A DNA stretch of 64,000 nucleotides, from contig NC_059440.1 of NCBI RefSeq assembly GCF_021028975.2, forward strand, positions 24,428,001 through 24,492,000, written 5' to 3'. Of the stretch, positions 5,280 through 30,004 are shown piece after piece. Source of the stretch: Sphaerodactylus townsendi. Taxonomy: Eukaryota. Within the stretch, counting starts at the first letter, position 1, and the number at the start of each line of letters is the position of its first letter. The position numbers and the translations under genes are program-made. The notes beneath the pieces are model-generated. The model was not told the origin of the DNA, did no database searches, and saw only the letters and a program-made list of their open reading frames with translations.

Positions 5280-5930
5280 CGACGGGGCTCCCACAGACGA
5301 CTTTGGCAGCGCTCGACTCCCAGTTTGCAGAAATCCTGAGTTAGCCCACCCTGCTCCCCAGCAAAAGACGGCGGGGGTGGGTGGGGGAAGGCAGTTAAGC
5401 CGGCGCCCCTCCCTCCTCCCGCTCCAGAGCCAGCCTAGCAGCGTGGGAGGGAGCGGGCCGGCGCGGTGCCCGGGCAGGGGCGGCCCCTGGCATCGCGGTG
5501 CCCGGTCGGAGAGGCCAGCTGGCTGCCTGTCGCCTGCCTCGCTCGCTCGGTTGTCCGTCCGTCCCGTCGGATCCTGTCGGTGCCGTCGGTCGCGGGGGGG
5601 TCCCGATGGCCAGCGCGGGCTTGCAGCTGGTGGGCTACTTCCTGGCGCTAGCCGGCTGGGTGGCCACCATCTGCGCCTCGGCCCTGCCTCAGTGGAAGCA
5701 GAGCTCGTACGCCGGGGACGCCATCATCACGGCCGTGGGGCTGTACGAGGGTCTCTGGATGAGTTGCGCTTCGCAGAGCACTGGCCAGGTCCAGTGCAAG
5801 CTGCACGAGTCCCTGCTGTCGCTCGACGGTGCGTCCGCCGCGGGGGTGGAAGGGGCCGGGGCGGGAGGGAGGCCGAACGGGGAGCTGGGTTGGTGGGGGG
5901 CGCCTCTTGCCCGGGGGGGGGGGGGGGGAA
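5280..5930 (+). promoter_or_regulatory. CpG island / promoter of CLDN19
   Basis: Sharp rise in GC and CpG content spanning the upstream region and exon 1. Confidence 0.7.
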
Positions 5931-8900
5931 GTTGCAGCAAAAGAATGGGGAGTATGGACTGCCAGCCAGGACCCATTGGGTTGGAGTTGCACTCGCCTCC
6001 TCCTGCATGAGTTGGCCAGTTTTAACAGGGTCTTTTGACAGCATCCCAAATGGGATCAGGGGTCTCCAGTGGGGTTAAGAGGGGTGGGCTGTAAGGTGGA
6101 GGAACAGGGTTTGATTCCTCACTCATCCACATGAGCTGCAGAGACATATCTGGTGGACCGGATTTGTTTCCGCACTCCTACATTCCTGCTGGGTGACCTT
6201 GGGCCAGTCACAGTTCTCTCTGAACTCTCTCAAGCCCCACCTGCCTCACAAGGTGTCTGCTGTGGGGAGAGGGAGTTTGTCAGCCACTGAGTTTCCTTGC
6301 AGGAGAGAAAAGCAGGGTATAACAAAGTCGTGATGGGGCAGTGGGGGGGAGGGGCGGGGGAGGGCAGAGGGCTTGCTTGCCTGCCAAACTATTCACCTGA
6401 GGCGTGATAAAATTGGCATCATTCATCACTGACATGTCTTTTTAGAAAGATAGATTAAAATGCTTCTCTGAAATTAGCAAGGGAGTGTGTGTGTGGGAGG
6501 TGTGCGTGCATGCGTGTGTGTGTGTTTGACAAACTGAAATTAACCTGAGTGGGGAGAAGTACTCTACCGGTGCTGTTGAAGTTCTGGGATTGGAAATCCT
6601 GGGTTTTTTTTTTTTTTTAACCTTTGCATCAACAGCAAGGGGGAAGACCAAATCTAGGCCCCTTCCGCACATGCAGAATGATGCCCTTGCAATCCACTTC
6701 CAATGCACTTTGCAGCTGGATTTTACTGTGCGGAATAGCCAGATCCACTTGCAAACAATTGGGAAAGTGGATTGAAAGTGCATTATTCTGCATGTGCGGA
6801 AGGGGCCTTAGAGCAGCAGCATGATGCTGGTCGTGGAAGGGTTAATCTGACCTGTGCTGCCCCCTCTCTCTGTTGTTTTTAGCCCAGCAGAGAAAACAAG
6901 ACAGGTGTCTGCAACCCTTCCCCCCTTGAGGAGCTAAATGCACAAGGAGAGCAATTTTAATCAGGAAAACTGGGCAGGGGAGTTCCCTCCCTCCCCCATC
7001 TACAAATCCCCCCCCCCATGATCTACAAATCCCCTTATCTGTATCAAGAGTTGCAACCATAGACTCCCACCAGCATAATTTTGGTCCTGCAAAATTAAAG
7101 TCAGCTGAACAGTTGTTTGCCTGCCTCCCCTGGAAGTTGCAAAGACTGGGTTTGTGCTTTGCTTCTTTCCTTCGCTTTGCAGTTCATATGCAGACTTCGA
7201 GAGCTCTAATGGTGGTCTCCATTCTGCTGGGCTTTGTGGGGGTCGTCGTCAGCGTGATTGGAATGAAGTGTACCAAAGTCGGGGACAAGAACCCCGTGAC
7301 CAAAAGCTGGATTGCCGTCTTGGGTGGAGTCTTCTTCCTGCTCGCAGGTAAACCAGAATTCCCTGCACCGTCCTACAGTGTGTGTGTTGTGACCGCTAGA
7401 ATGCTGACTTAAAGACAAGGAAAACCTGGCTTCAAAATCCTAGCGACGTGCATGGCTTTGGGCTACATTTTCTCAAGATGTCCTACCTTGCAGGGTTGTC
7501 ATAAAATGAGGAGGGAAGGGTTTGTGGGGGTAAGATGAGAAAATAATTAGACAGGTGTGAGCTTGTGTAACTGAGGCATGTTGGTTTTTCAACCGAACCC
7601 CTGAAAATGCTGTTAATTATAAAACCAGGTCAAGTTGTCCACCGATCTGAACATTAGCATAGAGAATCTACACAGAGAAGAGTGTAATCAGGTCATAATT
7701 CAGTAATTTGAAGGACAAATGTTGTCTTGAACACGGACATTCACTTGTCTGTGGCTCACCTAAAATTTATCTTGAATTTCTTAACTCCTCCCAACCGCAG
7801 TTTGCTTTACATCTAAAATTCCCAGAGATTTTGCTGTGCAATAGGTTTGATGAAAATTCAGCACATGTTCATGAAACATTCAGGCGCCAAGCTTCCATTA
7901 AAAAAGTGAATGGAAGTACGAGCAAGTTGCGCACCAATGGATAGTCAATGAAATAGGTCTTTACCATGAGATGCTTGAAAAGGTAAAGGTTGTCCCCTAC
8001 TCAAGCACCAGGGTCATTGTTGACCCATAGAATGACGTGACATCATGTCTACCCAAAGAAAAATTAGCTACTGCCTGCCAGCTGAAAACATCCTCATAGT
8101 CAGCAGTACAGCTAGTATGGCCCCTTCCACACACGCAGAATAATGCACATTCAATCCACTTTCACAGTTGTTTGAAAGTGGATTTTGCTATTCCGCATAG
8201 TAAAATCCAGCTTCAAAGTGCATTGGAAGTGGATTGAAAGTGAATTATTCTGCATGCGCAGAAGGGGCCTATAGTTGTCGGAAACCCTGAGGAGGAGGGA
8301 GGGATACAAAAAAAAAGGAAAAGGAGGGAATTTTTTCCCTGCTTACATATTTATTTTGATAGTGATCATTTCTCCCTTTCTTGACCAATCGTAAAATAAT
8401 GCAATTATGCCATTTTTTTTTAAAAAAGGGACTTCAAAAATAGTCCATAGCGTAACAAAAAATCAACATATTTGACATGGAAGGAGTTTTATATTTTTTT
8501 GCTTTTTATGGTATACCGGAGTGCTGTTGTGCTTCTGTGGAAAAGCAGAAAACAAGTTAATAAAATGTTTTGCCGTTCACTGCCTTCAAACAGAAGGGCT
8601 CTTGGAACGCGCAGATCTTTTCAAAGAACAAAGAAATCCTTTTTAAAAAACCTTCAATTTAAGAGAAGAGTTAAAGGCACTTATTACCTCAATTATGCGC
8701 CCCCACCCCCACCCAAAAAAGAACTTGCACATGAAAAATTCCACTGTAATTCTGTATCCTGTGAGGGCAATGTTGAGGTTATGTAGTCCAACATTGTCAT
8801 TACAGTAGTATTACAAAATAATAGTCATTAAACAAATGGAAAAAGATGAAGGAACAGACGTGCAGCAAAATAAAAACATACCTGTTTTCAAGCCCCCTTC

Positions 8901-11900
8901 CTTCTATTTACTTACTCCTGCCAGAGCTGTTAGTTCAGCACATTATACGTAAATGTCAGCAAACCCCAAGAAACAGGGTCACTAGTTTCAAGGTGTGGCC
9001 TAGAAAGGCAACTTCAGTTCCCTAGAGGAAATATCAGCTTCCAAAGAAGGGGAGGGGGATACAGCATCACCACAACACTGAGATCCCTTCCCTCCCTGAA
9101 TATTGTCCTTCCCACCACCAGAATTTCCCAAGCCCAACTTGGCGACTTACCCAGAAAGGAAGAGGCAATTCATTACACTACAAGTCACAAAATGGTCATT
9201 AAAGACATCACATCTTGGCAGTTGCTAAAACCATGTCCAACCACTTAACTTTTTCAGCTCAGCCTAAAGAAATGTGTTTTCAAGATGGCAGCTGCCATGG
9301 CCTGATTGCCGCTTGCTCAGAGGCTTAGTAAGGGCAGTAGGCCCAGCAGTGTTCTGTGGCTGATGTTTCACATTGCCATACCCCTTGCTGCTTAACGATT
9401 TATTGGCTGATGAAGAGGAAGGACAGATTGGTAAGCATAGGAAAGTAGCAGCCACTGCCTTTTTGGCACAGTGGGTCCTGAGCAGGAGCAATCTATCTGA
9501 GCAGTGGGGATTTTAGCAGCACTGAAAGCTGACAAGCCATCTGGGCCAATGCTAGAGTGTGTATGGAGACTATAACTTACGTTGATATCGCTTGAAAGCC
9601 AGCGTGGTGTAGTGGTTAAAAGCAGGTGCACTCTAATCTGGAGAACTGGGTTTGATCCCCCGGTTTGCCACTTGAGCTGTGGAGGCTTATCTGGTGAACC
9701 AGATTAGTTTGTGCATTCCAACACATGCCAGCACATGACCTTGGGCTAGTCACAGTTCTTTGGAGCTCTCTCAGCCTCACCCACCTCACAGGGTGTTTTT
9801 TGTGTGGTGGGTGGGGGGAAGGAAAAGGAGATTGTAAGTCCCTTTGAGTCTCCTTGCAGGAGAGAAAGGGGGGATATAAATCCAACTCTTCTTCTTCTTT
9901 TGGTGCTGAGATCAGAAAAGCTACACAGTGCCGTTCTAATTACAGTTGTAGCTTTCTAAAACCCAAATTACCCCTTAGGATTCGTAATGTGTAGTGTCTT
10001 GATAGCCCATCCCCCCCATACACACAGCTTTGTCTGAAATAGTCCAAGATCAGATGCAAGAGAATGCATTTCCCAAATGCACATACTCTGTACCACTGAG
10101 GCCCCTTCCGCACACGCAGAACAATGCACTTTCAATCCACTTACAGCGCACTTTGCAGCTGTGAGGAATAGCAACCTCCACTTGCAAACAATTGTGGAAG
10201 TGGACTGAAAGTGCATTATTCGGCATGTGCGGAAGGGGCCTGAGCCACTCCACCCCTTCAGCACCCTGCCTGCTTAAGCTATCAGGATCTAGGTAGCTAC
10301 TGTTAAATAGCTGCACAGGCCGGTTGAAAAATTGGCCATCTTGACTTTTTGAAGTCGAGCAACCATAACTGTGTTCTCTAAGGGGAAAAAATTTAGATAC
10401 TTTGAGTCTTCCTCTGTGTTCCCAGGTTTGTGCACAATGACGGCTGTTTCATGGTACGCGACACGAGTGACGGTCGAATTCTTTAATCCGAGCACGCCAG
10501 TTAATGCCAGGTGAATAAATGTCATGTCTAACCATTGCCAAAGGGAGGGCAGCGTGTTGGCCTTCTACAGGCCCAGTTTGGAATGGGGAATATGCAGAGT
10601 CAGTGTAGCCCTGACGACAGCAAATTCCTGCATTTAGACATGGGTGTTCCACAGTGATGTAGGAAAGAAATGCAAGAGATTGCAGTATAAGACACGAGCC
10701 GACGTCTGAATGCCCTGGGACAAAAACACGCTAATAGTTATTTACTCCACAAATCAACAACAAAGCTGAAAATCTAAAGAAATTACAAAAATGTGGCCAG
10801 AAGATAAATAGCAAAATATGAACAGTAAGAAAATATATACAATAACAAGAAAATATTTGCAGTACAACAACAACAGCCTTTGTTGGCACTGAACGTTAAA
10901 AGTTACAGACTTTGAGTCACGTATCCTCATAGCAATTGAGAGAAACTTGGCTACCCCCACTGTTGATATAATTTATTCAGTCGGTTGTAATGGGTGGTAA
11001 TTTATTACGGTATATTAATATGTTGTAATGTGTGACAATATATTGTTATTCCTGTAGATGTTTGTGTCTGTTTCTGTTTAATCTCCCATGGAGTAAATAA
11101 GAATTTGTGCATTATCACTGTTGGAAGCCATGAAGGAGCTAGAAAAAATTCCTAAGCGTAAGGATGTGTCGCTGGCAAAAAAGATCAAGTTAATTCCTGC
11201 CACGATGTTTATCCCTGTTTCTGTGTTTGGGTGTGAAACTGGACAACGCTGACAGGAAGAAAGTAGATTCCTCTGAAATGAAGTGTTGGAAGAGAGTGTG
11301 ACAGAGGCCCCTTCTGCACATGCAGAATAACACATTTTCAATCCGCTTTCAGTGCACTTTGCAGCTGTGCGGAAGAGCAAAATCCATTTGCAAACAGTTG
11401 TGAAAGTGGATTGAAAGTGCATTATTCTGCATGTGCAGAAGGGGTCAGATACCATGCAATGCCAAAAAATCAAATAAGTGGGGTCTAGATAAAATTAAGC
11501 CTGAACTCTCCCTAGAAGCTAAAAATGATTAAACAGGATTGTTGTGAATCAAAAGAGGAAGGCCAAAAATGTGATTGGTCCTTTGTCAAGAGATGCCCTC
11601 TGGCATGAGCAACCATTTCTCTACCACCAAACACACGAAGCCGAGACCAGCCACTGATCCAAACAGTCCACTTATATGATTGGCTCAATGATCCCCAAAT
11701 GATAGACGCATTCCAAAGTCTATTATGAAGGGTGTTTTTCCCCCCAGCTGTTCTACCTTTTTAACAGGAGATGCTCTGCGACTGAGCATGGAGTCTCCTG
11801 CATGCCCTCACCTGCTGAGCCATAATCTGGATGACCTTGGGATGCTGCTGTGCATCTTTTTAAGCGCAGCCAGCCAAGGTTACAGCTTGGTTTGCACTCG

Positions 11901-12081
11901 TTCAACCCTCTCTTTTTGCCGCAGGTATGAATTTGGGCCTGCTCTGTTCGTCGGATGGTCGGCGGCCAGTTTGACCCTGCTCGGAGGGTCTTTCTTGTCC
12001 TGTTCGTGCCCCAGACCGGAAGACAGAGGACAACAGTACTATCGACAAGCGCAGCCTTCGACGACTAGAGAGTATGTCTGA
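5606..12081 (+). CDS. CLDN19: Claudin-19 (209 aa)
   Basis: Exons 5606-5828, 7183-7347, 10426-10510, 11925-12081, all GT-AG, 630 nt in frame. Protein [18 protein letters not shown]...[39 protein letters not shown]...[23 protein letters not shown]...REYV matches the CLDN19 signature. ATTAAA at 12657-12662. Confidence 0.95.
6068..6322 (+). mobile_element. tRNA-derived CORE SINE, degenerate
   Basis: Same family, more diverged. Confidence 0.7.
6657..6807. mobile_element. PIF/Harbinger-type MITE (~140-150 bp, long TIRs)
   Basis: TIR GGCCCCTTCCGCACATGCAGAAT; 3-bp flanks CTA/TTA. Confidence 0.85.
8119..8269. mobile_element. PIF/Harbinger-type MITE
   Basis: Same TIRs, TSD TAT. Confidence 0.85.
9598..9900 (+). 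mobile_element. tRNA-derived CORE SINE
   Basis: Full-length copy. Confidence 0.85.
10100..10240. mobile_element. PIF/Harbinger-type MITE
   Basis: Same TIRs, TSD TGA. Confidence 0.85.
11100..11580 (+). mobile_element. Degenerate RTE/BovB-like LINE fragment interrupted by a MITE
   Basis: Decayed coding traces resembling 'CW.R...[20 protein letters not shown]'. Confidence 0.55.
11306..11446. mobile_element. PIF/Harbinger-type MITE
   Basis: Same TIRs, TSD AGA. Confidence 0.85.
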
Positions 12082-13061
12082 ACCTCGTTGCCCCTCTTTG
12101 CGGGAGGGTGGAAAGAGAAAGAGACGTTTGTTCTATGCAGCGGAGGATCCGAGCTGTGTCCTGCCTTCCTCCCAGACACGGAGGCATGATAATTTCTCAG
12201 GGTTTTTTTTCATTTGCTCTTCAAATTGGGTCCCAGGTGGTTCCTCTCTGCATCTGCAACCCTGTGGCACCCCAAGTTATGGGGAGGGGACCCAAGCAAC
12301 GGTTTGTGGGCTTGAAACTAACGGGCCTCTTCTTTTTCATTTTGTTTTCCTTGATCTTTCAGACCCACTGTAAAAAGGGGAGATCAGTGCCTATAATGTC
12401 TTCACTTCTGTCGGGGGGAAAGAAGTATTTATGTCCTGAGTATTCCCTTCAGAAAGTCCAAATATGGCTGTGTCAAGGAATTTTTTTTTTTTAACATAGC
12501 CCCAAAATCCATTTTCTATACTGGATTGAAAACTGAGGCTGGGATGTATTCTTCTTATAATTTAAACTTTGTATTAACTTTTCTACTGCACAGCGTCTAC
12601 TGCTTGACGGCTCTGAATTTCAGAACGCTTTTGGTTGTAATGGTTTGTACTAAAATATTAAAATGTGTTTTGGCAGTGGCCAGCTTTTTAAAATCTGTAC
12701 GTCTCTCATTTCTGTGGGTTTCTGGCCCACCTTTGGCTGGTGATGGGCAAACACAATTGTCCGCGCTAGAACCTAAAATGGCTTACATGTTTTCAAGCAT
12801 CTCCTACAAATCCTCAAAAACGCTCAACAGTAATTTGCAAGTGCTTGACGCGATGGTCGCAAAATGCAGGTATGTGCAAACGCATCCATGCAGTGGGAGC
12901 CATGACATGCCCTCCCATCCCATCCCTGGTCCACAAATCTTATCTTTCTGGGATCAAGTATGGAGGGTAGCTCTTACAGAGGGCAGCTTTAACAATGCCA
13001 TTGTGGCACAGTGGCTAGAGTGTTGGACTAAAATCCCAGGAGATGTAGTTCCTGGGAATGT

Positions 13062-13823: not shown

Positions 13824-14140
13824 AGGTTCAGATCCCTACTTCTACCAAAGTAGCTTGCTGGGTGTCCTTGGTTCCACCACAAATTAGACAGAAGCGTAAT
13901 AGCAATTAAACAAAAAACACCGCCAATCCTGTGTGTATTGTTAGTGGTTTGTATTTTTGTAACTTTCTGTATTTATGCCTGTTCGTAGCTGTTTTAGACA
14001 ATAGTGCACTTATTTTCACTTGTTAATTCACTTAGTAAATTAGTAGCAAGTATAGAAGTTTGTGTGTTTGGACTGGCGGTGTTTTTTGGTTATTATTAAT
14101 TGTCCTTGGCTCCATCACATATTCTCAACCTCATGTATCT

Positions 14141-15547: not shown

Positions 15548-16589
15548 ATGTCCGGGAAGATTCAAGTCCAAACACATGACCCTTTCTTTCAGCCTGGTCG
15601 GTTGATCAGATGTTTTAGTCTGAAAGTCCCCCAAAAGAAAAGCAGGAAGACCCTTGAAACTGCTTTCTACTCTCTGGAGGAAAATAAAAATCTCCATGCA
15701 TTCATGCCGGGGTCAGTTGCACCTGTATATCTTAAATGAAATAAAACGCATACATACAGAACTTCGGACACGCGGCTGCAGAAAGTGCTGTTTTGATGGT
15801 GGCATTAATGTGTACAGTTCAGGAGCCAGGGCAAGCAGGTATAATCCCCTACCACCACACCACACCAGTACAACACATGAACAGGATTACTCCGTGTCAG
15901 GAACCCAGACTATCCTCTGAAGATGCTCGTAGTCTTTCTTCTGGCCAGGTTAACTGGAACTGCTGACTTCAGAAATAATTTGCACTGCTCTGATGAGCCA
16001 TGGAAAGGTTTAGCCCCAGACAGGGCATAACTCTTTGCCAGCTCAGCATGCTCACAAAGGCACTCGAGGATGCCAGCACCTGCCTCAGATGTGTGCATGC
16101 TTTCTGACCCATGGCTGTTTTAATTGCAAGGAAAACCATCACCCCACAGAAACACAAAGCGCATCTGACGTGGTTCGGAAAAGCTGCGGGTCCGGCCCAA
16201 AGAGGTAGATTTAACCTTCTGCCGCGTCAGATGTTGTCTTTGCTAGACTAACACCATTTGATCGTGAGTCCACCTAATATTCCAAGGCTCAAAACTCATC
16301 TGATCGCCTCTGACAATTCTTGAAGTATACCTACTGTAATTCTGTCCAGACCCTCCGGCAACTCCTTTGAAGATGATGAAGGCTTAGAGTCTGGTCCGGC
16401 CACAATCAAGGTAACTTCTAATTTTGAGAACGTTGCTGGGTGGGGGATGTGTTTTATAGAAAAGTCCTTGTCCCTACACACACACAACCTAGAACTGAGC
16501 TTTGCTCCTTAAAATAGTCTTAAGATTCTTGGTTCTTTTTAAAAAACTAATATTTCTAGGCATATTTTTTATTTTGTTTTCTGTGTATC

Positions 16590-18955: not shown

Positions 18956-19109
18956 CTCATTAGGGACTCCTAATTTTTTAGAGTCTCATCGGATTCCCTC
19001 AAACTCATAGGCTTGAAACCCCCAGCAAAACTCAAGCTGCACTAGCAAGCTGGATAATTACTGCATAGCAGAAGGTTCAGGTTTGCATCAAGGTAATGGT
19101 GAATAGGGG

Positions 19110-19609: not shown

Positions 19610-22600
19610 ATGGCTGCGCTGGTGTCACAGATGTCTTTCTGTGTGGCTTTGGTCTCCACCCTCTTCCTGATTTCAGCCACTTGGACCGACTGCTGGATGG
19701 TGAATGTTGATGACACCATAGAGGTGAGCAGAAACGGGAGAGGCCAGTTTTAAAAGACCAACATGAGCCCAAATGCAGTCAGAGAAAAACATGACTCCTT
19801 TGCATCCCTTCCAGACCCTTCAGAGCTGGTAGGTTTGGTTTCTTCCTTTTAGAAGAATAAGAATTTGGATTTATACCCCACCTTTCCCTCCTGTAAGGAG
19901 ACACAAGGTGGCTTGCAAGCTCCTTTCCCTTCCTCTCCCCACAACAGACACCTGGTGAGGCAGGTGGGGCTGAGAGAGTTCTGAGAGAACTGTGACTAGC
20001 CCAAGGTCGCCCAGCAGGAATGTAGGAGCGCAGAAACGCATCTGGTTCACCAGATAAGCCTCTACCACTCAAGAGGAGGAGTGGGGAATCAAACCCGGTT
20101 CTCCAGATTAGAATCCATCTGCTCTTAACCACTACACCACGTTGGCTCTTTTAGGCATTCCTTCTGTTTCTAAGGGATTCACTGTCATATCAATTGTTTG
20201 TAAACCACTGAGGTGGTTTTTTGAGTGGGAAAGTGGGATATAAGTCCTTAAATTAAAAAAGAAACAAATGAAAAGTTATTCTCTGAATCCAATGTTCTTT
20301 GATTTTCAACATTCCTATACAGCAAGATAGGGTCCAGTTTACATCAGAGGGACCTTCCTAGTTTAGGACAGCTCCCTGAGTCTTGGGAGGGAGAGAATCC
20401 CAGAATCCCTCACACTTATTGCAAAGGACTTTGGGAGACTCTATCATTTGGCTCCTGAGTTATCTCCAATTTGGCTAGGCTTTGCACAAGTAAAAGGCTG
20501 ACTGCGGAGGGGTGGAACCAGGGAGGTGTTTGTGCCCCACCATATGACCAGTCCTGGGAATCTCTAGAGCAGGCCATGCAGAGCTCTTCTGCCCTTTCTC
20601 TGTCCCCATGCAGGTCAGCCAGAAGTGCCGAGGGCTTTGGAGGGAGTGCGTCAGCAACTTGAAAGACGGCATCAAGACCTGCGACCTGCACGATTCCATT
20701 TTAGCAGAACATCCCCGTAAGTCTCCATCTACGGATAAGAAGAAGAGTCCTCTTCACCCCTGGTGGCCTCAGACAGTGGTTTTAAACTCTGAGCAATTGC
20801 GTCTCCCTGGCGCTCATTTTATCCAGCAGTGGTTTGCTCTCTTCCCCCCAGTCAAGATCGTGGTGACGCGGGCCTTGCTGATCACGGCAGACATCCTCTC
20901 GGGCTTCGCTTTGGCTCTGCTGGTGCTGGGCCTCGACTGCATCAAGTTCCTGAAGGACGAGCCACAAGTCAAGCTGAAGATGTGCTATTCGTCCGGATTG
21001 GTGCTGGGGGTCGGAAGTAAGCGTTTGGGGGAGCTTGTGCCGCTAATAACAAGCCAGATTTCTTCAGGGGAATTACACTGGATGGTTTGAGGCATAGCTC
21101 ACTGGCAGAGGCATACCAGGGGAAAATGGTGCCCTGAGCAACACCTGCTCGGGGCGCCCCCCATGCCCCCTCCGGTCCCATTTACCTAAGCTGCTGCTGG
21201 CGGTCCCAGGCAGCCTGGCAGGGCCAGGCCTGGCGGGGCTAGACTGAGAGGTGCCTGGTGGGCCGCTCCTTGGCTCCATCCTACCAGGCTGCTCTTTCAG
21301 CCGGCAGAGCCTCTGACAGCTTTAGGAGCAGCCTGGCAGGGCCGAGTCAAGGGGCAGCAGGTCAGTTGATCCCCCATGTCAGTCTGACAGTTACGCCCAG
21401 TGGTGGGATCCAAAAATTTTAGTAACAGGTTCCCATGGTGGTGGGATTCAAACTGTGGCGTAGCGCCAATGGGGCTGGGCGGGGCACAACGGGGGCATGG
21501 CCGGGCATTCTGTGGGCGGGGCATTCCTGGGCGGGGCGGGGCAAGGATGCAGCCACTGCACCGGTCCTTGGGCGCGAAACGAATGCACGCAGGCGCAGGC
21601 TGCCACGCATGCTGGTGCACTTCCTGCTAGACTGCTTCAAGTTCTGCGCGCTACTGCTGAGAGGAGGGGCGTAACTAAGGCGAAAATCACGTGGGAAAAT
21701 CACCAATTAGTAACCCCCTCTCGGCACACACAAATAATTAGTAACCTACTCTCGGGAACCTGTGAGAACCTGCTGGATCCCACCTCTGGATACGCCCCTA
21801 CTCACTGGACCTCTTTGCCTGCCAGGTGTCCTCGGACTAGTGGGCTCGGTGTGGTACGCCATTGACGTCTACCTAGAGAGGATCAGGCTGGCGTTACACA
21901 ATGTATTTTTGGGTGTCCATTACGATTTTGGCTGGTCCTGCTGGTTGGGAATGGCAGGATCCACAGGCGGCCTTCTGACTTCCATCGTGTTGACCTGCTG
22001 CCTTTATTCCCTCACAGGTTAGTATTTATTTCACTTGCGACTCAGGTGCCCTCTAGATCAGGACCCCTGCCCACAGTGTAATCAATGCTTTGTATATTTC
22101 GCCCTCCAAAATAATAATCAGAAAAGAGCTGACAAAATTAGCAGGCAAGACGGAATGGAGCGTGCTCAGAAAATGGCAGCGAGGAGGAAGACCAGAGATG
22201 CAGAGAGGGAAACGTCTTAAAGAGATCACACAGCAAATCAAAACGTTTTCAAAACGTTCCAGCAAAAGAATTGCTATTCTCGAGAATGCGTTCAAAACAT
22301 TTTCAGGCTGGAAAGAAAACATGTTTTGGGGAAAAAACTATGTGGAATCCCTCGGAGAAAATGTTTTTATTTCCTGCCTCAAAATGTTTTAAAGTGTTTG
22401 TGTGGAAAGGGCAAAAGGGTTCTAGTCCAAGACAAGGCTGTCAGGGATGCGAGTCCCAGGCAGAGAAGAACTTTAAAGGACCAGAGTTTTGAATGCTCAA
22501 TATTCTAATTCTTCCATCACAGCTGATGCCACTTCCTCCCGGAGACCTCACCGATTCACGTTCTGTTCGCGGGCGGCCACCTGCAAGATGTATGCCGTCG

Positions 22601-22614
22601 CTTCTCGAGTGTGA
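19610..22614 (+). CDS. Claudin-16-like protein (CLDN16 paralogue, 221 aa)
   Basis: Exons 19610-19723, 20614-20716, 20852-21016, 21826-22017, 22523-22614 (114/103/165/192/92 nt), all GT-AG and in frame. Motifs [68 protein letters not shown] and C-terminal KMYAVASRV are diagnostic of the CLDN16 (paracellin-1) family. Confidence 0.92.
19852..20147 (-). mobile_element. tRNA-derived CORE SINE
   Basis: Full-length copy of the second subfamily (CACTCCTACATTCCTGCTGGG variant). Confidence 0.85.
21398..21788 (+). mobile_element. Non-autonomous hAT element (~390 bp)
   Basis: TIRs CAGTGGTGGGATCCA / TGGATCCCACCTCTG; 8-bp TSD GTTACGCC/GATACGCC. Confidence 0.88.
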
Positions 22615-22911
22615 CACGGCTGAAGGATACCCCCGTGTCAGCTGTTGATATGGGATCGTTAATTGTACGGATCTTTTCTTTCAGCTAAGGAGAGAAGGCT
22701 GGCTTTTGAGGTCACCTGCACCATGTGCCCCCCTACCCAGCAGCCCCAAGGGACAACACTGCTATCAGCATAGCAAGCCAGACATTGTTAGTGTCTTTAT
22801 CAAGCAATGGGTGGTTAAGGTGAATTCACTGAATCATAAAAGACACGATGCAATTGGGCTTCGTCTGGTTTAATAGATATCCGGACTCATTTCTGGCAGA
22901 GAAACCCGCTT

Positions 22912-25900
22912 TCACAGGTACGTGCCTTTGGAAACAGGAGGGGGAAACCGAGGGCTCTGATCCTTTCTTAGACTCTGGGCGTCGAGAGAGCTGGCAGCGA
23001 TCAGCAAAATCCCAGCAGCGCAGGCACAAGCAGCACCACCTGCAGCCATCCAGTAGGCACAGCCGAGTTCATAAGTCACACCTGGAATTCCTAAAGTCAC
23101 CTGGAAGAAAACTGAAGCAGTGAGCAAGCTGGGGCAGGGTGTCCATCAATCGACCGATCACATTGGTAGCCCACCTTCCCTTCAAGGAGCTCAGGGCCGC
23201 AAACATGATTCTGTCCTGGCAACTGGCCTTTACAACAACCCTGTGAGGTAGGCTAGGTTAAAAACCAGCATCCGGCCTAAAGTCATTCAATGATCTTTAC
23301 GGCAAGGTGGAGATTTGAACCTGAGGCCATCTAATTTCAGTCCAACGCTCTAGTCATGATACCATACCGGCTGTTGGAGTTAGAGCAGTGATGGCGAACC
23401 TTTTCGAGACCAAGTGCCCAAATTGCAACCCAAAACCCACTTATTTATCGCAAAGTGCCAACACGGCAATTTAACCTGAATACTGAGGTTTTAGTTTAGA
23501 AAAAATGGTTGACTCAGAGGCGTGCGTTACTCGGGAGTAAGCTTGGTGGTAGTCGGTGGCTTGGCTTTGAAGCAACCATGCAACTCTCCCAACGGATGAA
23601 TCAAGACCCTAGGAGGGTTTGCTCAGAAGCCAGCCCCATTGCCAGCAACCGAGCTTACTCCCAGGTAAAGGATCGCGCTTTAGTTCTTTGCATGAAAATC
23701 AGTGGGGTTTAACAGCGTTTAGCAGGGTTACCTACACTGCTTCCCCAAAATGAGGTCTTAGGTTTAATGCTAATAATCAAGCCCAGTGGCCCAGGCCAGC
23801 CTGGATGTGTGTGGGGTGGGGGGGACTCTGTTTTCGCGTGCCCACAGGGAGGGCTCTGAGTGCCACCTCTGGCACCTGTGCCATAGGTTCGCCACCACTG
23901 GGTTAGAGTGTCAGACCCAGGTTCGAATCCTCACTTTGTCATGGAAGCTTGCTTGGCTACTCTTGGCTGGTTATTTCCTCTCCACCTAACATACCTCACG
24001 GGGTTTCTGTGGCAGAGAGAATGCTTTAAACAGTTTAGGATTTCTGTCGGAGAGAATATCTAAATCGACAGCCAGTGCAAGGTTAAACCTTGGGATGGGC
24101 TTGGAAAATCCCTCACGAGCCCAAACATGGTGAATTTTTGTCAGACAACAATGCGGACGGCTAATAGGAATTTGCCTCAAACAAATAATTCTCTCCCGGG
24201 GGGGAAATCTGCTGTTTTCTCATAATATTAAACCACAATGAGCTTTAGTCTGTGGCTTTAGACCATACGTTCATATACATATATATATGCATTCATTCCT
24301 TTCATGGCTCAGTTTTTTAATGCTAGCGATTGTTCTGGGAAACAACACAGACAAACAGTCGATTGTGAGGAGACGCACATTAATATTAAAGCGGGGGGAG
24401 GGGGAGTTGCATACCCTTCAAAAAAACATAGAAAAATATGTTTCCTTGTACAGTTGGTAATACTGCATTGTCGTTCAATTTCATCATCTAATTCAGGCGT
24501 GTCCAACTCTGGTGCTTTTTCAGTGGAGAAATAATGCCCCCACCCAGTGGTGAGTTTCAAATAATGTAGCAACTGGTTGTTTACAAGCACCATTTTAACA
24601 ACCGGTTCTGCCGAAGTGGTACGAACCTGCTGGATCCTACCACTGCCTCCACCCCCGTTATGATGAAGATGCTATTGAGAGAAGAGCTCCAAAAGGGTCA
24701 GGTTTTTTAAAATGGCAATCCTGCAGTGTTTCACCTCCAAATCTCCAGGAGTTTTCCAACATGGATCTGGTAACCGACACTCTGGCCCATTCCCTATGGG
24801 GGACCTGGTAACCCTAGCTCAGCCACAACCCGTTCCCTTAAAACAGCTGAATAGGGTCTCCCTCATCTGACACTTTAACATCCACTATATCGTAGAGATT
24901 GTACTGTATATTTCCTGTACCTTAGTGCCCCTGTTCTAACCTTCCTAACTGCCTCCAGGAACCGAATTTACCTCTAATTTATACTTCTGCACGGTGTCGA
25001 TACCATACCAAAGGACAGCGATTGCACCAGCTAGACCTAGGGAAGAGAGAAAAATATTGCGTGTTGACTGCAAACTTTATCTCCCCCGATCCTGTGCCTT
25101 TAACAACAAGTAATAATACATCAACTTAGTAGGAGAAGCATTTCTTGGCCAGAAAAGGCAACAGGATTTGACCCACATTATTGTACACTCCACTTCTCCC
25201 CATTCACTCTTCACCGCACAGTATTCATTTGCTCAGCAGCGATCCAACGTATGGTAGTTATTCTTTCCAACTTATCCACCATGGTGGCTGATTTCCTACC
25301 TCCACATCCTACTGGAGCAAGGATGGGAGAATGGAGGTATTTCCAGGTAAAAACCGGAAAGTGATATCACCCTCACTCTAATATTTTGCTTTTACCATAG
25401 AGATTAGCAAAATCCTAGAGTATCAGTTACATCACTTCCAGGTTTTAGCCAGATGTGATGTCGGTGCTGATGCATCAACAACATATTTTTCCCCCATGTC
25501 CCACCCTCCAAAGTCTCCCAGGGATTCCAAGAAGAGGGAATCTGAGGGGGTGGAGACATAGGGGAGGGCCATCAGTGGGATGGCATGACATCACTTCCTG
25601 TGATCTTTTGTCTGCATTTTTCTCCCACAGGCCACCACTCAACAATAGGGAAAGCCATTAGGATCTCTCCTGGTCTCGCAGTTTGTGGCTTGGCTCTTCA
25701 GCCTGAGCCACTTGGCTGTTCAGTCATGAGCAAGCTACTTGACGACTGCTTTTCCCATGTAAGGAGAGAATATCAGCCTGCAGGTGGGACCTGTGGATGC
25801 CTCAGAATTACAGACTACAGAGATTTGTTCCCCTGGAGAAACTGGATGCTTTGGAGGGTAGACTCTGGTCCCTTCCGCACATGCAGAATAATGCACTTTC

Positions 25901-28900
25901 AATCCACTTCCACAATTGTTTGCAAGTGGATTTTGCTATTCCACACAGCTGCAAAGTGCGTTGAAAGTGGACTGAAAGTGCATTATTCTGCATGTGCGGA
26001 AGGGGCCTCTGTGGCATTGTACCTCACTGAGATCCCTTGCCCTCCCCCGTTTCACCTGAAAATCCCCTGCTGAAATCCCCTGCTCTCCCTGCTGAAATTC
26101 TGTGCGTAACTTGTTGCCAAAGGCACAGAAAGAGACCCAGTCAAAAAGGTGGCATTTGTTAGAAACGTGTTCGTGTTTGAGATCTTCCCAGAGCCGCAGC
26201 CCAGACAGAATAAGTTTGACTCACTCCCGCAAGAAGACTAAAGCCTCACTTACCTCCCAGGAGGAACAATGTCCCAGCTGCCAGGGAGAACTTGTATTTC
26301 CACAGGACTTTGTCACGAATCAGTTTGGTGCATTTCATCCCAGCAATGAAAAGGGGCATGGCGGCAAGCGTCAGGAAGCCAGTAAGGATGACCAAGACCC
26401 GGGTGGCCACAAAGACAGCTGCAAATAGAGGGGGGGAGTGATCATGGCATCTGAGGAAAGAAAATACCACCAGGGGCCGAGCAGCCAGAACTCTGCACTA
26501 GTGATCATTTTTGCCCACCTTGTTTGCAATTTTCTTTACGCAAACTTTTGCAATACAAATACTAACTCTTTTCCCCAATGGCATAAAAACAGGGTGTTTT
26601 TTTAAAAGACACACGTTGTACCTGCCACTATTTACCATCTTATATTATTCATAAGCAAACAATAAGATATATCGACAACAGTGCAATCTCAAGTACAACA
26701 ATCTTAACACATCAAAGTACTCTACAACGTATATACACTCAAGACGTCCTGTCATATATTGCAGAATTCGCCAGGGTTGCCAACCTACAGCTGGTGTCTG
26801 GAGATCTGCCAGAATTACAGCCGGTTGCCTGACAATGGAGATCAGTTTCCCCAGATGAAATGGGAGCTAGAGTTAACAGTGAATGCTAAGGCTCAACACA
26901 ACCTATAGATGTAGCATGGTAACCTGCGGGAGATATAGTATGTTGACCTGCTGGTGGCCTAAGCAGAGACTTAGGTTAATACACAGCGTGGTGGTTAATA
27001 CACAGCGTGGTGTAGTGGTTAAGAGCAGGTGCACTCTAATCAGGAGAACTGGGTTTGATTCTCTGCTTCGCCACTTGAGCTGTGGAGGCTTATCTGGTGA
27101 ACCAGATTAGCTTGTGCACTCCAACACATGCCAGTTGAGTCACCTTGGGCTAGTCACAGGTCTTTGGAGTTCTCTCAGCCCCACCCACTTCACAGGCTGT
27201 TTGTTGTGGGAGGGGGGAAGGGAAAGGAGACTGTAAGCCCCTTTGAGTCTCTTTACAGGAGAGAAAGGGGGATATAAATCCAAACTCTTCTTCTACTACT
27301 ACTTGGATGACAGAACACCAAGGAATTCCAGGGTTACTATGCAGAGGCAGGTGACTTCTGAAGCCTCTTAGCCTACGGAGTCACCATGATTGGCTGTAAC
27401 TTGACAGCACTTGCCGCCACCACCAGTCAGACAGTGTAAGATTGTTTTGAATAGTGGACCAGGTTTTGAGTGCAGAAGATCCTGTATCCATTCCTCAGTT
27501 TAAAAGATCTCGGATAACAGATCTGGGAATGGCCCCTCCCCGAAGTTCCTGGCATAAATAAATACCATGAACCTGGCTTCCTGGTTGTGTCTGGTCAACA
27601 AAGTGTTGTCGTTCGTTTGCTGTATTTCAAAGTCTGCTTCTGAAATTCCAATATGACCTGGAGATTCCATCCGAGATATGGATAAGGTTTCCCACCCACC
27701 CAAATAACTCGGACTCATTTTCCTTACCGGGGTGTTCGCTGAGATAGGAGATAGGAATATCACAAGTCCAGAGGTCAGCCACGTTATCAAATATGCACTC
27801 ACTCCACAGACCCCGGCATCGGACGCTCAAGCCCACAGAAGATAAAGGATCCTTGGCGTCTTGCTGTACAAGGGAAATTTTTGGATAATGCAAATATAGG
27901 AAAAAATAGTGAAATGGAAAAAAAGTAAATTAAATGAAGAAATATCTAAATACATTTTGTAGAACCAGGTCTGGATGGTTCTACAAAATCCCCCCACCCC
28001 CAGAATTATTTTTAAAGCTTTATAATTTGCAACATTTCCATTTGCAAAATTTCTAATTTTGTTGGCCAGGAAGGGGAGGGGGGATTTCACCTGTCACTTT
28101 TTAATCAGCAAAGTTCTATATTTATAACCCTCCCCAAAAAAGTTGATATTTTGCAAATGCTACTCCCAAAATGTGCCAAGCCATAGCCCCTTTAAGGATA
28201 TTTTAAAATGCTTCTGTGATCCCGAAATCTCCCTAGCGCTACAGTGATTAAGCACAGCTTTGGGACCCTGCGAGATACCTTAAGGGCATTGTTATTTCTC
28301 TGAGGAAACTGCAAGGGATAAGCAGAATGAAGCTTCCAAACCAACATTAAATAGTTAACTAAACTTGGCATCATGCTAAACCTAAGAATTAATTTTAAAA
28401 CATTAAAAACACATAGATCTTTGAGCTTGGCAAGAGGGTTCTAGAAGTTTCTATCAGTCATGAGGCGAGTTTCCATTAACTTATTGGATGCCCATCTTTG
28501 AAATATGGTGAACCTCCTTGTGAGGAAGGCTGAGGACAGTGTAAAAAATAGAGAGAGGGGAGTGTGTATGTGTGTGTGTGTGTGTGTGTGAAACACCCAC
28601 AGAATAAAGTGAATTGTTCCTCTCTTTTTGACCTTTCCAGGAGCACAGCAGATGCCACTGGCATTTATTGCCACCAATATATTTCTCAGGGCTTAGTGTT
28701 CCCATGACGATGGCATCATTTTCTCTTTTTTAAGCAGCTCGGCCAAAGTATTTCTTTGGTTCCAGCGTGAATGGAATTACCATCTATATCTTCTCAGGGA
28801 GAAAGGGGAAGGGACAATATTAGTTTGAAGACCAAAGTCTAGGGCCCCTTCCGCCCATGCAGAATAATGCATTTTCAATCCACTTTCACAACTATTTGCA

Positions 28901-30004
28901 AGTAGATTTTGCTGTCCCGCACTGTAAAATCCAGCTGCAAAGTGCATGGAAAATGGATTGAAAGTGCATTATTCTGCATGGGGCCTAGGTTAAGACGTCT
29001 GGGGAAAATGCCTCGTCCTGTTGCAGCTGACTTGGTGGGGGGGTCTCTTATGGGAAATCCTAATTCAGGCTCAAAGCAAAATTGTGTGACGCTGAGATGC
29101 ACCTGCATTTGTTCAGCTTCTGAATTTTTCAGTATTGCCTTTCTATCCTATCTCATTACTTTGATGCCCCCTTTGTATGGACGATTTACACCAATTGCGC
29201 AAGATGATCAAGTTGCCCCCTAGGATCTGTCCATCGGTCTTCCCTCATGCTGTGTATCCCCAACCTGTTTCCTTTGTTACGAAAGGGTTCACATTTTGAG
29301 AATAGTTACCTTTTAAGAATAACTGGAAGATAGGAGTAATTGATGCGTGCACCATTATTGAGTGTACCAGCGTTACATTGTGTTATAGCTGTGATCGTCA
29401 GTTGCACAAGCTAAAATGAACTTTTTGAACAGTACGGTGAATGGTTAGGCAGAGAGACTGGGACCCCCCCCCCCCCCACACACACACACACAAGCTCCCC
29501 CACTGTGGTCATTTGGGATGCCTGCCACCAAATCCAACCCAATTCATTCATTCATTCATTGAATTTCTATACTGCCCCTCCCCTGATGGGCTCGGGGCAG
29601 TAAACTTCATGATACTTCACGATATAAAACCAAATATCTAAAACTATATCAGTTTTTTTGATTGTCAAGATATGAGCTTTGATGGTGCTCGGATTCTGAA
29701 AGACACAGTGCAACGGTTAGAGCGTCGAACTAGAGCAGGGGAGACCTGAGTTCAAATCTCCCTTCAGCCATGAGTGACTTGGGATCATTTACTCCCTCAA
29801 GGGACAGCCCAGCCTGCAAGGCAGTTGTCAGAGACCCATTTACACCCCCATAAGCAGGTGGGATGCAATGTATTTGACAGAGAGAAAGTTAATTCCTACC
29901 CGCCAGCAATCTGATTCGGCACACAGGATGAGAAGCAGAAGGCCCGAGACCCCCAACGCCATCGCCAACATATCCGCAGCCAATGCAGGTGCTGTGATTT
30001 TCAT
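22912..30004 (-). CDS. Divergent claudin family protein (CLDN16-related ECL1, 219 aa)
   Basis: Minus-strand exons 30004-29900, 27863-27728, 26418-26254, 25036-24972, 23100-22912 (105/136/165/65/189 nt), all GT-AG and in frame. Protein MKITAPALAADMLAMALGVSGLLLLILCAESDCWRQDAKDPLSSVGLSVRCRGLWSECIFDNVADLWTCDIPISYLSEHPAVFVATRVLVILTGFLTLAAMPLFIAGMKCTKLIRDKVLWKYKFSLAAGTLFLLGGLAGAIAVLWYGIDTVQKYKLEVTLGIPGVTYELGCAYWMAAGG...SKGTYL has four hydrophobic segments and the W-GLW-C-C claudin signature. Confidence 0.9.
23386..23900. mobile_element. Non-autonomous hAT (Charlie-like) element
   Basis: TIRs CAGTGATGGCGAACCT / AGGTTCGCCACCACTG; TSD AGTTAGAG/GGTTAGAG. Confidence 0.88.
24545..24645 (+). mobile_element. 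Short hAT MITE related to 21398-21788
   Basis: CAGTGGTG...GAACCTGCTGGATCCTACCACTG; TSD CCCCCACC/CCTCCACC. Confidence 0.7.
25867..26007. mobile_element. PIF/Harbinger-type MITE
   Basis: Same TIRs, TSD TCT. Confidence 0.85.
26983..27302 (+). mobile_element. tRNA-derived CORE SINE
   Basis: Full-length copy with a short duplication at the 5' junction. Confidence 0.85.
28843..28985. mobile_element. PIF/Harbinger-type MITE
   Basis: Same TIRs, TSD TAG. Confidence 0.85.

What the first reader, a model, noticed from the sequence alone, without database searches (positions are those of the whole stretch)
5606..30004. Intact three-claudin cluster (CLDN19 + CLDN16-like + divergent claudin): candidate reptilian paracellular ion-channel module
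Seen: three complete, in-frame, spliced claudin genes within 25 kb, each ending in a PDZ-type C-terminus (EYV, SRV, TYL). Established: mammalian CLDN16 and CLDN19 co-assemble into the cation-selective pore for renal Mg2+/Ca2+ reabsorption but sit on different chromosomes, and I recall no other claudin beside human CLDN19. Inference: here CLDN19 is physically linked to a CLDN16-type partner and a third subunit, suggesting a co-regulated tight-junction complex for mineral or water handling (kidney, cloaca, oviduct/eggshell, or gecko endolymphatic calcium sacs) that mammals lost.
Basis: partly seen in the sequence, partly recalled or inferred. Interest (0 to 1): 0.82.

Follow-up and report, generated by a model that had tools for sequence, protein, structure and literature searches.

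The report
Ancient CLDN19–CLDN16-like claudin gene cluster
The gecko window holds three intact tight-junction (claudin) genes: CLDN19, an old duplicate of the magnesium-pore gene CLDN16, and a third divergent relative. The trio is not a reptile invention but a cluster kept from sharks to lizards and lost in the one placental mammal sampled.

Summary
The window is Sphaerodactylus townsendi, chromosome CM037629.2 (window base 1 is about record base 24,428,001). It carries three complete five-exon claudin genes with canonical GT-AG introns:
- CLDN19 (5606-12396, +).
- A CLDN16 paralogue, here called CLDN16L (19610-22614, +), identical to the 221-aa NCBI protein named 'claudin-16'.
- A divergent CLDN16-family gene (30004-22912, -, 219 aa).

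The cluster is not reptilian. The same order and orientation occur in Podarcis, Eublepharis, Alligator and the elephant shark. Ostrich keeps CLDN19-CLDN16L followed by a cold-shock-domain gene (probably YBX1). A lamprey has a CLDN1/19-type gene just upstream of its CLDN16-type gene.

CLDN16L is not the CLDN16 orthologue. Squamates, including a gecko, also have a true CLDN16 elsewhere, and the tree separates the two clades before the shark/bony-vertebrate split.

'Lost in mammals' is too broad. Platypus and bilby have a claudin gene call directly after CLDN19. A golden jackal has none within 10 kb.

Both extra genes are under purifying selection (dN/dS 0.10-0.26). Co-expression and assembly with CLDN19 could not be tested: no RNA runs were found, and the complex prediction gave no answer. 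The genes are machine-annotated but I found no description of them in the literature.

The parts
5606..12396 (+). CLDN19. Coding exons 5606-5828, 7183-7347, 10426-10510, 11925-12071 and 12363-12396 (217 aa). An alternative read-through of exon 4 ends ...REYV with the stop at 12079-12081.
   Evidence: Exons hit Pfam PF00822. The best solved-structure match is mouse claudin-19, at 125 bits against 77 for the next claudin. Exon 1 is 99% identical to Gekko japonicus claudin-19. The exon model is 199/217 identical to Phrynocephalus CLDN19. Both C-terminal forms occur in other vertebrates.
19610..22614 (+). CLDN16 paralogue (CLDN16L; NCBI name 'claudin-16'). Exons 19610-19723, 20614-20716, 20852-21016, 21826-22017 and 22523-22614; 221 aa; ends KMYAVASRV.
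   Evidence: The conceptual product equals P0001 exactly. It falls in the CLDN16L clade (support 81/97), apart from the true CLDN16 clade (92/90). The ECL1 acidic residues D34, D35, E49, D56 and E70 are kept and the ECL1 net charge is -4. dN/dS is 0.18-0.26.
22912..30004 (-). Divergent CLDN16-family claudin (gene 3). Exons 30004-29900, 27863-27728, 26418-26254, 25036-24972 and 23100-22912; 219 aa; ends KGTYL.
   Evidence: The span and product length match the NCBI call, which carries PF00822. The ECL1 exon is 96% identical to Podarcis and Eublepharis, 80% to Alligator and 67% to Callorhinchus. Orthologues are found in tegu, salamander, frog, bowfin, lungfish and teleosts. dN/dS is 0.10-0.16.
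16097..16179 (.). Conserved non-coding block between CLDN19 and CLDN16L. It could be a regulatory element or an untranslated exon.
   Evidence: This is the only non-exonic blastn match between the gecko and Podarcis loci (78% over 83 bp). It lies inside a 700-bp block conserved with Eublepharis. Its function was not tested.

Best explanation
The stretch is the gecko copy of an ancient vertebrate gene cluster: CLDN19 -> CLDN16L -> <- third CLDN16-family claudin. P3H1 lies upstream where it could be seen, and a cold-shock-domain gene (probably YBX1) lies downstream in ostrich.

A CLDN1/19-type gene next to a CLDN16-type gene already existed in the common ancestor with lampreys. The CLDN16 / CLDN16L split predates the shark/bony-vertebrate divergence. 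That timing fits the two rounds of vertebrate genome duplication, with the human P3H2-CLDN1-CLDN16 block at 3q28 as the sister block. That last arrangement is from established knowledge of the human map and was not tested here.

Gene 2 is therefore a paralogue of CLDN16, not its orthologue. Gene 3 belongs to a second, faster-evolving branch of the same subfamily.

Shown here: all three genes are intact, and the two extra ones are constrained.

Inferred: each encodes a four-helix tight-junction strand protein with an acidic first extracellular loop and a PDZ-binding tail. CLDN16L most likely acts like CLDN16, as a cation-permeable paracellular channel subunit that co-polymerises with CLDN19. 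Gene 3 would be a further, modulatory or alternative, subunit.

The confidence value is for the identity and the evolutionary reading. I rate the functional partnership with CLDN19 at about 0.4.
For: Identity and intactness:
- See the parts list.

Conserved synteny in the same order and orientation:
- Podarcis.
- Alligator, where an older assembly has a fused leprecan/P3H-claudin call immediately upstream.
- Callorhinchus.
- Eublepharis.
- Ostrich has CLDN19, CLDN16L and then a cold-shock-domain gene on the minus strand.
- In lamprey, a claudin whose last exon reads like CLDN1/19 and ends KEYV lies 10 kb upstream of the CLDN16-type gene.

Paralogy:
- Eublepharis, Hemicordylus, Anolis, Mixophyes and Callorhinchus each have both a 'claudin-16' and a 'claudin-16-like' protein.
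- In Eublepharis the true CLDN16 is on another chromosome.
- The careful ML tree gives a CLDN16 clade at 92/90, a CLDN16L clade at 81/97, and gene 3 plus 'type D' at 96/91.
- The AU test rejects a sauropsid-only duplication (p = 1.9e-8).

Constraint:
- dN/dS is 0.10-0.26 against Eublepharis, Podarcis and Alligator.
- In the gene 3 ECL1 exon, pN is 0.02-0.03 while pS is 0.5-0.75.

Channel-like features:
- The W-GLW-C-C signature is present, ECL1 net charge is -4 in both extra genes (against -6 to -9 in CLDN16), and the tails are SRV and TYL.
- The AlphaFold model of P0001 has four confident helices, and its top fold matches are all claudins.
Against: - There is no expression evidence. No RNA run holds the locus, and the reads laid were only genomic contigs of congeners.
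- There is no evidence of binding to CLDN19. The complex prediction scored 0.00, which the tool counts as 'no answer'.
- Support for the CLDN16L clade is moderate by bootstrap (81), and the lamprey sequence is unresolved, so dating the split to the genome duplications is inference.
- P3H2-CLDN1-CLDN16 linkage was not verified with these tools. No claudin lies within 10 kb of Eublepharis CLDN16.
- ECL1 was not modelled with confidence (pLDDT under 50).
- In congeners, the listed differences in gene 3 exon 5 are all non-synonymous, so its C-terminal part is less constrained.
- The gecko's own true CLDN16 was not seen.
Confidence: 0.85

Rival explanations
1. The linkage is only a relic of history (tandem duplication followed by genome duplication). 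Genes 2 and 3 work in tissues or complexes that do not involve CLDN19, so there is no co-regulated module.
For: Claudin genes often lie in tandem without forming obligate partners (established knowledge). Ostrich has lost gene 3 but keeps CLDN19 and CLDN16L. Platypus shows no gene 3 remnant within 5 kb. The only literature mention of a clade member is a differential-expression table for eel larvae. Non-mammals already have a true CLDN16, and Xenopus cldn16 and cldn19 are co-expressed in the TAL-like pronephric segment, so the classical role is already filled.
Against: Order and orientation have been kept for roughly 450 million years, from shark to gecko. That is longer than expected without some constraint. 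CLDN16L keeps the ECL1 acidic residues and the KMYA..SRV tail of CLDN16.
Confidence: 0.4
2. One reading: a reptile-specific (or sauropsid-specific) three-subunit paracellular channel module for mineral or water handling, which mammals as a whole have lost.
For: The three genes are intact and linked in the gecko. The eutherian sampled lacks the two extra genes within 10 kb.
Against: The cluster is present in the elephant shark, and both extra gene families occur in amphibians and fishes. Platypus and bilby carry a claudin gene directly after CLDN19. The AU test rejects a sauropsid-only origin.
Confidence: 0.05
3. Gene 2 is simply the gecko's CLDN16 orthologue, as NCBI names it, relocated next to CLDN19.
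For: NCBI names it 'claudin-16' in S. townsendi. It has the same five-exon layout, the same ECL1 acidic residues and a similar tail. The gecko's own second CLDN16 was not retrieved here.
Against: Another gecko (Eublepharis) and several other squamates have both genes. Gene 2 is only 55-60% identical to true CLDN16 proteins, against 62-83% to sauropsid CLDN16L and 65% to the elephant-shark CLDN16L. The tree and the AU test separate the clades. The position next to CLDN19 is shared with the shark.
Confidence: 0.04
4. Genes 2 and/or 3 are decaying or non-functional copies that gene predictors still call.
For: Gene 3 exons are too divergent for Pfam on their own (best E = 0.059). The platypus copy of CLDN16L has very divergent exons 3-4. 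Congeners show non-synonymous differences in gene 3 exon 5. There are no RNA data.
Against: The reading frames are open and the splice sites canonical. dN/dS is 0.10-0.26 over three comparisons. The gene 3 ECL1 exon is 96% identical between gecko and lacertid while synonymous sites differ at 50-75%.
Confidence: 0.03

Closest known systems
Claudin-16 (paracellin-1, CLDN16), the thick-ascending-limb Mg2+/Ca2+ pore subunit
   Same: Gene 2 has the same five-exon layout. It has the W-GLW-C-C signature, all five ECL1 acidic residues implicated in cation selectivity (D34, D35, E49, D56, E70 in 235-aa numbering; the functional role is from my knowledge of the literature), the GLDC intracellular-loop motif and a KMYAxxS/TRV tail. 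Gene 3 shares the CRGLW.EC....TCD....HP core of ECL1.
   Different: Gene 2 is a separate, old paralogue: 55-60% identity, its own clade, and a position beside CLDN19 rather than CLDN1. It has a less acidic ECL1 (-4 against -6 to -9), with the W48R change shared by amniote copies, and a cytoplasmic tail about 14 residues shorter. Gene 3 has a 3-residue ECL1 insertion, a classic-claudin GMKCTK loop, a shorter ECL2, an extra intron position and a TYL tail.
Claudin-19 (CLDN19)
   Same: Gene 1 is the orthologue. It has the best match to the solved mouse claudin-19 structure, 82-99% identity in exon 1 across vertebrates, and two alternative C-termini as in other species.
   Different: Nothing notable.
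Human P3H2-CLDN1-CLDN16 block at 3q28 (recalled from the human map, not tested here)
   Same: The same gene-family order: a prolyl 3-hydroxylase, then a CLDN1/19-type claudin, then a CLDN16-type claudin. It is the expected sister block after genome duplication.
   Different: The gecko block carries an additional inverted CLDN16-family gene. Whether the 3q28-type block ever had one is unknown. 'Type D' genes (P0121) may be relevant, but in Eublepharis they lie on the CLDN19 chromosome, 5.3 Mb from the cluster.
Machine-annotated 'claudin-16-like' proteins in NCBI and UniProt
   Same: Gene 2 and the orthologues of gene 3 are already predicted under this name in many sauropsid, amphibian, fish and shark genomes.
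   Different: The name lumps together at least three distinct paralogue groups: CLDN16L, gene 3 type and type D. In some shark and fish genomes it is also applied to the true CLDN16. I found no paper that describes them.

Membership tests
Claudin family (Pfam PF00822, PMP22/claudin) | Significant match to the family profile | tested here: met
   CLDN19 exons match at E = 2.5e-10 and 1.8e-8. P0001 (gene 2) and the 219-aa NCBI product of gene 3 carry precomputed PF00822 hits. Single exons of genes 2 and 3 are too short or divergent on their own.
Claudin family (Pfam PF00822, PMP22/claudin) | The W-(G/N)LW-C-C signature in the first extracellular loop | tested here: met
   It is present in all three genes: W..GLWMSC..C in CLDN19, and CW..CRGLW.EC..TC in genes 2 and 3.
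Claudin family (Pfam PF00822, PMP22/claudin) | Four transmembrane helices with the claudin fold | tested here: met
   This was tested for gene 2 only. The AlphaFold model has four helices at pLDDT 72-94, and its top ten Foldseek hits are claudins (TM-score 0.41-0.65; E = 3e-3 for the best hit, up to 4e-2 at rank 10). The ECL1 sheet was not modelled. Gene 3 was not folded, because the joined model was not sent to tools.
CLDN19 orthologue (gene 1) | Closest to CLDN19 among claudins, and located at the P3H1 locus | tested here: met
   A ...GKDEL stop at window 132-146 fits the end of P3H1 (suggestive only).
CLDN16 orthologue (gene 2) | Groups with mammalian CLDN16 to the exclusion of other paralogues | tested here: not met
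   It falls in a separate clade. The AU test gives p = 1.9e-8 against a sauropsid-only duplication. True CLDN16 coexists with it in other squamates.
CLDN16 orthologue (gene 2) | Acidic ECL1 residues and a T/S-R-V PDZ tail | tested here: met
   D34, D35, E49, D56 and E70 are kept, and the tail is SRV. These features show that it may work like CLDN16; they do not show orthology.
CLDN16L clade (gene 2) | Monophyly with 'claudin-16-like' genes that lie directly after CLDN19 | tested here: met
   The clade has support 81/97 and includes the Callorhinchus cluster gene. Synteny is shown.
CLDN16-CLDN19 heteromeric cation pore (function) | Co-expression in the same epithelium | not testable with these tools
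   No RNA run holds the locus.
CLDN16-CLDN19 heteromeric cation pore (function) | Physical interaction with CLDN19 | tested here: inconclusive
   The complex prediction of P0001 with a squamate CLDN19 scored 0.00, and the verdict was 'no answer'.

The most novel reading that the evidence does not exclude
The CLDN16/CLDN19 divalent-cation pore pair began as neighbouring genes in the vertebrate ancestor. Most non-eutherian vertebrates would still run a multi-subunit system with up to four members (CLDN16, CLDN16L, the gene 3 type and the positively charged 'type D'). These subunits would assemble with CLDN19 or CLDN1 to tune paracellular Mg2+/Ca2+ handling in kidney, gut, oviduct or calcium-storing organs. 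Eutherians would have reduced this to the single CLDN16-CLDN19 pair, which draws one gene from each duplicated block.
Probability: 0.3. Interest if true: 0.7.

Novelty: new member of a known kind. Interest (0 to 1): 0.5.

Why it matters
CLDN16 and CLDN19 are the human disease genes for familial hypomagnesaemia with hypercalciuria. How the pair came to work together is not known.

This locus shows that a CLDN16-type gene has sat next to a CLDN1/19-type gene since before jawed vertebrates arose. It also shows that most vertebrates keep two or three further CLDN16-type subunits that the standard mammalian list of claudins omits.

That gives comparative physiologists concrete, constrained candidate genes for paracellular mineral transport in reptiles, birds, amphibians and fishes. 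It also flags a naming problem: in this gecko the paralogue is labelled 'claudin-16'. Anyone using the annotation to study CLDN16 in sauropsids could pick the wrong gene.

Tried and rejected
- Pfam on single exons of genes 2 and 3 gave nothing useful.
- RNA evidence: the look-up of sequencing runs returned only DNA runs of this and related species. Read laying therefore showed only genomic contigs, and its difference table was truncated, so no polymorphism-based test was possible.
- Complex prediction of CLDN16L with a squamate CLDN19 gave a verdict of no answer. It is not evidence either way.
- The AlphaFold model of P0001 did not resolve ECL1, so no pore geometry could be read.
- I looked for YBX1 or other flanking genes in window 30-64 kb, using frames from the ostrich, jackal, alligator and shark flanks and Pfam on ten long ORFs. 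The only results were retroelement matches and one weak MFS hit.
- I looked for CLDN1 within 10 kb of Eublepharis CLDN16 and found none.
- Literature searches for 'claudin-16-like', cldn16a/b/l, the P3H1/P3H2 paralogy and claudin synteny found no description of these genes. Loh et al. 2004 is not held.
- The reading that gene 2 is the translocated CLDN16 orthologue, and the reading that the extra genes are pseudogenes, were considered and rejected (see rival explanations).
- Joined (spliced) proteins of CLDN19 and gene 3 were not sent to any search, fold or tree tool. They were searched exon by exon by reference, and database proteins of orthologues stand in for them.


Full report
**Where the window comes from.** A protein search with the frame that spans gene 2's second and third exons found, as best hit, the 221-aa 'claudin-16' of Sphaerodactylus townsendi (P0001). 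The contig that encodes it (GCA_021028975.2, CM037629.2) is 100% identical to window 9610-32614 over 23,005 bases. The window is therefore that gecko chromosome, with window base 1 at about record base 24,428,001. It contains no N.

**The three genes.**
- Gene 1 (plus strand) has exons 5606-5828, 7183-7347, 10426-10510, 11925-12071 and 12363-12396, giving 217 aa.
- Reading through exon 4 instead gives ...TTREYV and a stop at 12079-12081. Both C-terminal forms exist in other vertebrates.
- Gene 1's exons hit Pfam PF00822. They match solved mouse claudin-19 far better than any other claudin, at 125 against 77 bits for exon 1. Exon 1 is 99% identical to Gekko claudin-19 and 81-84% identical to the mammalian and fish CLDN19 proteins listed.
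- Gene 2 (plus strand) has exons 19610-19723, 20614-20716, 20852-21016, 21826-22017 and 22523-22614. These reproduce P0001 exactly.
- Gene 3 (minus strand) has exons 30004-29900, 27863-27728, 26418-26254, 25036-24972 and 23100-22912, giving 219 aa. The span and length match the NCBI gene call, whose product carries PF00822.
- All introns are GT-AG. The C-termini are EYV (or QCL), SRV and TYL.

**A note on method.** Spliced models were assembled only inside local scripts, to fix exon boundaries. I did not send the joined CLDN19 or gene 3 proteins to any search, fold or tree tool, so database proteins of orthologues represent gene 3 in the tree.

**What gene 2 is.** The search returned about a hundred 'claudin-16' and 'claudin-16-like' proteins from sauropsids, frogs, eels, bony-tongues and cartilaginous fishes, with mammalian CLDN16 lower in the list.
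- One bird hit (Colius, P0092) looked like mammalian CLDN16. Used as a query, it recovered a full set of true CLDN16 orthologues: birds, turtles, tuatara, many squamates, the gecko Eublepharis (P0273), amphibians, coelacanth, lungfish, gar, sharks and a lamprey.
- Several species therefore have both genes. In Eublepharis the true CLDN16 is on a 145-Mb chromosome and the gene 2 orthologue is on a 46-Mb one.
- A careful maximum-likelihood tree with CLDN19 as outgroup gives a CLDN16 clade from sharks to mammals and sauropsids (support 92/90). It also gives a separate clade holding gene 2, other sauropsids, frogs, eels, bony-tongues and one of the two Callorhinchus genes (81/97).
- Forcing all sauropsid sequences into one clade costs 95 log-likelihood units (AU p = 1.9e-8). 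The group was named after the tree was seen.
- Gene 2 is 55-60% identical to true CLDN16 proteins, 62-83% identical to sauropsid members of its own clade, and 65% identical to the elephant-shark member.
- Gene 2 is therefore an old paralogue, called CLDN16L here. The NCBI name 'claudin-16' for it in this gecko is misleading.

**What gene 3 is.** Its exons are too divergent for Pfam alone, but its ECL1 exon resembles that of CLDN16 (44-54% identity).
- An exhaustive phmmer search with that 45-residue exon found orthologues at 73-89% identity.
- By name these are from tegu, salamander, a frog, bowfin, alligator, lungfish and a deep-sea eel relative. More distant ones are in percomorph teleosts. 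Most are labelled 'claudin-16-like'.
- The search also revealed a further group, 'type D' (P0121, P0126, P0127), that is not in this window.
- In the tree, gene 3 orthologues form a clade (98/94) that is sister to type D (96/91). Both are on long branches.
- Gene 3 and type D share a short fourth exon of 65-69 nt that CLDN16 and CLDN16L lack.

**Synteny.** The arrangement claudin(+), CLDN16L(+), claudin(-) recurs in four other species:
- Podarcis raffonei.
- Eublepharis.
- Alligator, where an older assembly's call fuses leprecan/P3H domains to the upstream claudin, which places P3H1 directly upstream.
- The elephant shark Callorhinchus milii.

Exon-wise tblastn confirms that the flanking genes in these loci are CLDN19 and gene 3 orthologues. 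The gene 3 ECL1 exon is 96% identical in the two lizards, 80% in Alligator and 67% in the shark.

Other lineages differ:
- Ostrich has CLDN19, CLDN16L and then a cold-shock-domain gene on the minus strand (probably YBX1). No gene 3 remnant lies in the 5.8 kb between them.
- In Lampetra fluviatilis a claudin lies 10 kb upstream of the CLDN16-type gene, in the same orientation. Its last exon reads like CLDN1/19 and ends KEYV.

The neighbour pair therefore predates the lamprey/jawed-vertebrate split, and the full trio predates the shark/bony-vertebrate split. That the sister block is human P3H2-CLDN1-CLDN16 rests on my knowledge of the human map and on an earlier scan note. I could not test it here.

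**Mammals.**
- In platypus a 206-aa claudin is called 3.4 kb after CLDN19.
- Its exons 1, 2 and 5 are clearly of CLDN16L type. They show [14 protein letters not shown] with the amniote W-to-R change, DQY, and the tail MYALNSRV.
- Its exons 3-4 are very divergent and GC-rich.
- In the bilby a 241-aa claudin is called 1.8 kb after CLDN19, but no DNA was served, so its type is unverified.
- In a golden jackal no gene is called and no remnant is detectable in the 10 kb after CLDN19.

'Lost in mammals' should therefore read 'absent in the eutherian sampled; present or partly retained in monotreme and marsupial'.

**Constraint.** Nei-Gojobori counts were summed over separately aligned exons.

| Comparison | Gene 2 dN/dS | Gene 3 dN/dS |
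|---|---|---|
| Eublepharis | 0.26 | 0.16 |
| Podarcis | 0.18 | 0.10 |
| Alligator | 0.18 | 0.16 |

- dS is partly saturated in the deeper pairs.
- The gene 3 ECL1 exon stands out, with pN of 0.02-0.03 against pS of 0.5-0.75.
- Genomic contigs of two congeners cover the locus. Among the listed differences, gene 2 has two synonymous and two non-synonymous changes, and gene 3 exon 5 has four non-synonymous ones. The table was truncated, so no rate can be derived.

**Likely mechanism.**
- All three proteins carry the claudin W-GLW-C-C signature.
- CLDN16L keeps the five ECL1 acidic positions known from CLDN16 work (D34, D35, E49, D56, E70), the GLDC loop and a KMYAxxSRV tail. Its ECL1 net charge is -4, against -6 to -9 in CLDN16.
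- Gene 3 has an ECL1 that is almost unchanged across tetrapods and bowfin (DCWRQDAKD.xSSxGLSxRCRGLWSEC...). Its net charge is -2 to -4. It has a classic-claudin GMKCTK loop and a TY(L/I) tail.
- Type D has a positive net charge (+1 or +2).
- The AlphaFold model of P0001 gives four confident helices, and claudins are its top structural matches, but ECL1 is not resolved.
- The inference is that CLDN16L is a cation-permeable strand subunit working as CLDN16 does, probably with CLDN19, and that gene 3 is an additional subunit with a conserved, specific extracellular interface.
- None of this is shown. No RNA run holds the locus, and the complex prediction gave no answer.
- In Xenopus, cldn16 and cldn19 overlap in the TAL-like pronephric segment (PMC2441470). 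The classical role thus exists outside mammals, and the extra paralogues may add to it or serve other epithelia.
- The only paper that mentions a clade member lists 'claudin-16-like isoform X1' as down-regulated 7.9-fold in non-viable eel larvae (PMC8227761).

**Novelty and verdict.**
- The genes are real, intact, constrained and already machine-annotated in this and many other genomes.
- I found no paper that describes the paralogues, the cluster or its history. The library is incomplete and key claudin-family papers are not held.
- I file this as new, uncharacterised members of a known family within an ancient, conserved cluster.
- It is moderately interesting for tight-junction and renal comparative physiology. 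It is much less exotic than a reptile-specific module.
- The scan had already noted genes 2 and 3 separately on this same DNA (s1-745888, s1-745870).

Noticed in passing
Not in the window; L006:10001-20808 (Eublepharis macularius CM053293.1, 16.47 Mb): A fourth CLDN16-family type ('type D': P0121, P0126, P0127, all labelled claudin-16-like). Its ECL1 has a net positive charge (+1 or +2) and it ends TYV. It shares gene 3's short exon 4. In Eublepharis it lies 5.3 Mb from the CLDN19 cluster on the same chromosome.
   Followed up: partly
L008:17218-18527 (platypus CM014204.1): A CLDN16L-like gene lies 3.4 kb after platypus CLDN19. Exons 1, 2 and 5 are conserved (tail MYALNSRV), but exons 3-4 are highly divergent and GC-rich, and two ECL1 acidic residues are replaced (D65G, E70R). 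It could be a fast-evolving or decaying copy.
   Followed up: partly
window 22612-22914: Genes 2 and 3 converge, with stop codons only 297 bp apart. Gene 3 has an AATAAA at 22874. No AATAAA or ATTAAA follows the gene 2 stop for 1.6 kb, so its 3' UTR probably runs antisense into gene 3's last exon.
   Followed up: no
window 132-146 (+): An open frame ends ...GPGKDEL followed by a stop. This fits the ER-retention end of P3H1, which lies directly upstream of CLDN19 in Alligator and in mammals.
   Followed up: no
window 16097-16179: This is the only non-exonic sequence conserved between the gecko and Podarcis loci (78% over 83 bp). It lies inside a 700-bp block conserved with Eublepharis, 3.4 kb upstream of the CLDN16L start codon.
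   Followed up: no
window 19610-22614: NCBI names this gene 'claudin-16' in S. townsendi, although it is the paralogue. The same clade is called 'claudin-16-like' in most other genomes but 'claudin-16' in some (for example ostrich and alligator). Some true CLDN16 genes of sharks and sturgeon are called 'claudin-16-like'.
   Followed up: yes
window 35240-35857 (+): A 206-aa ORF has weak Pfam hits to MFS transporters (E about 0.006, below the curated cut-off). It may be an exon of a neighbouring transporter gene.
   Followed up: no
window 13184-13633, 15056-15343, 19850-20140 and many other places: There are retroelement debris and a very high-copy element of about 290 bp (a dozen or more copies in the window, with enormous contig depth in the genomic runs). 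They fill the introns and the CLDN19-CLDN16L spacer.
   Followed up: no
L013:12130-17964 (ostrich): No gene 3 exon is detectable between CLDN16L and the cold-shock-domain gene (probably YBX1). At least this bird seems to have lost the third claudin, which alligator keeps.
   Followed up: partly
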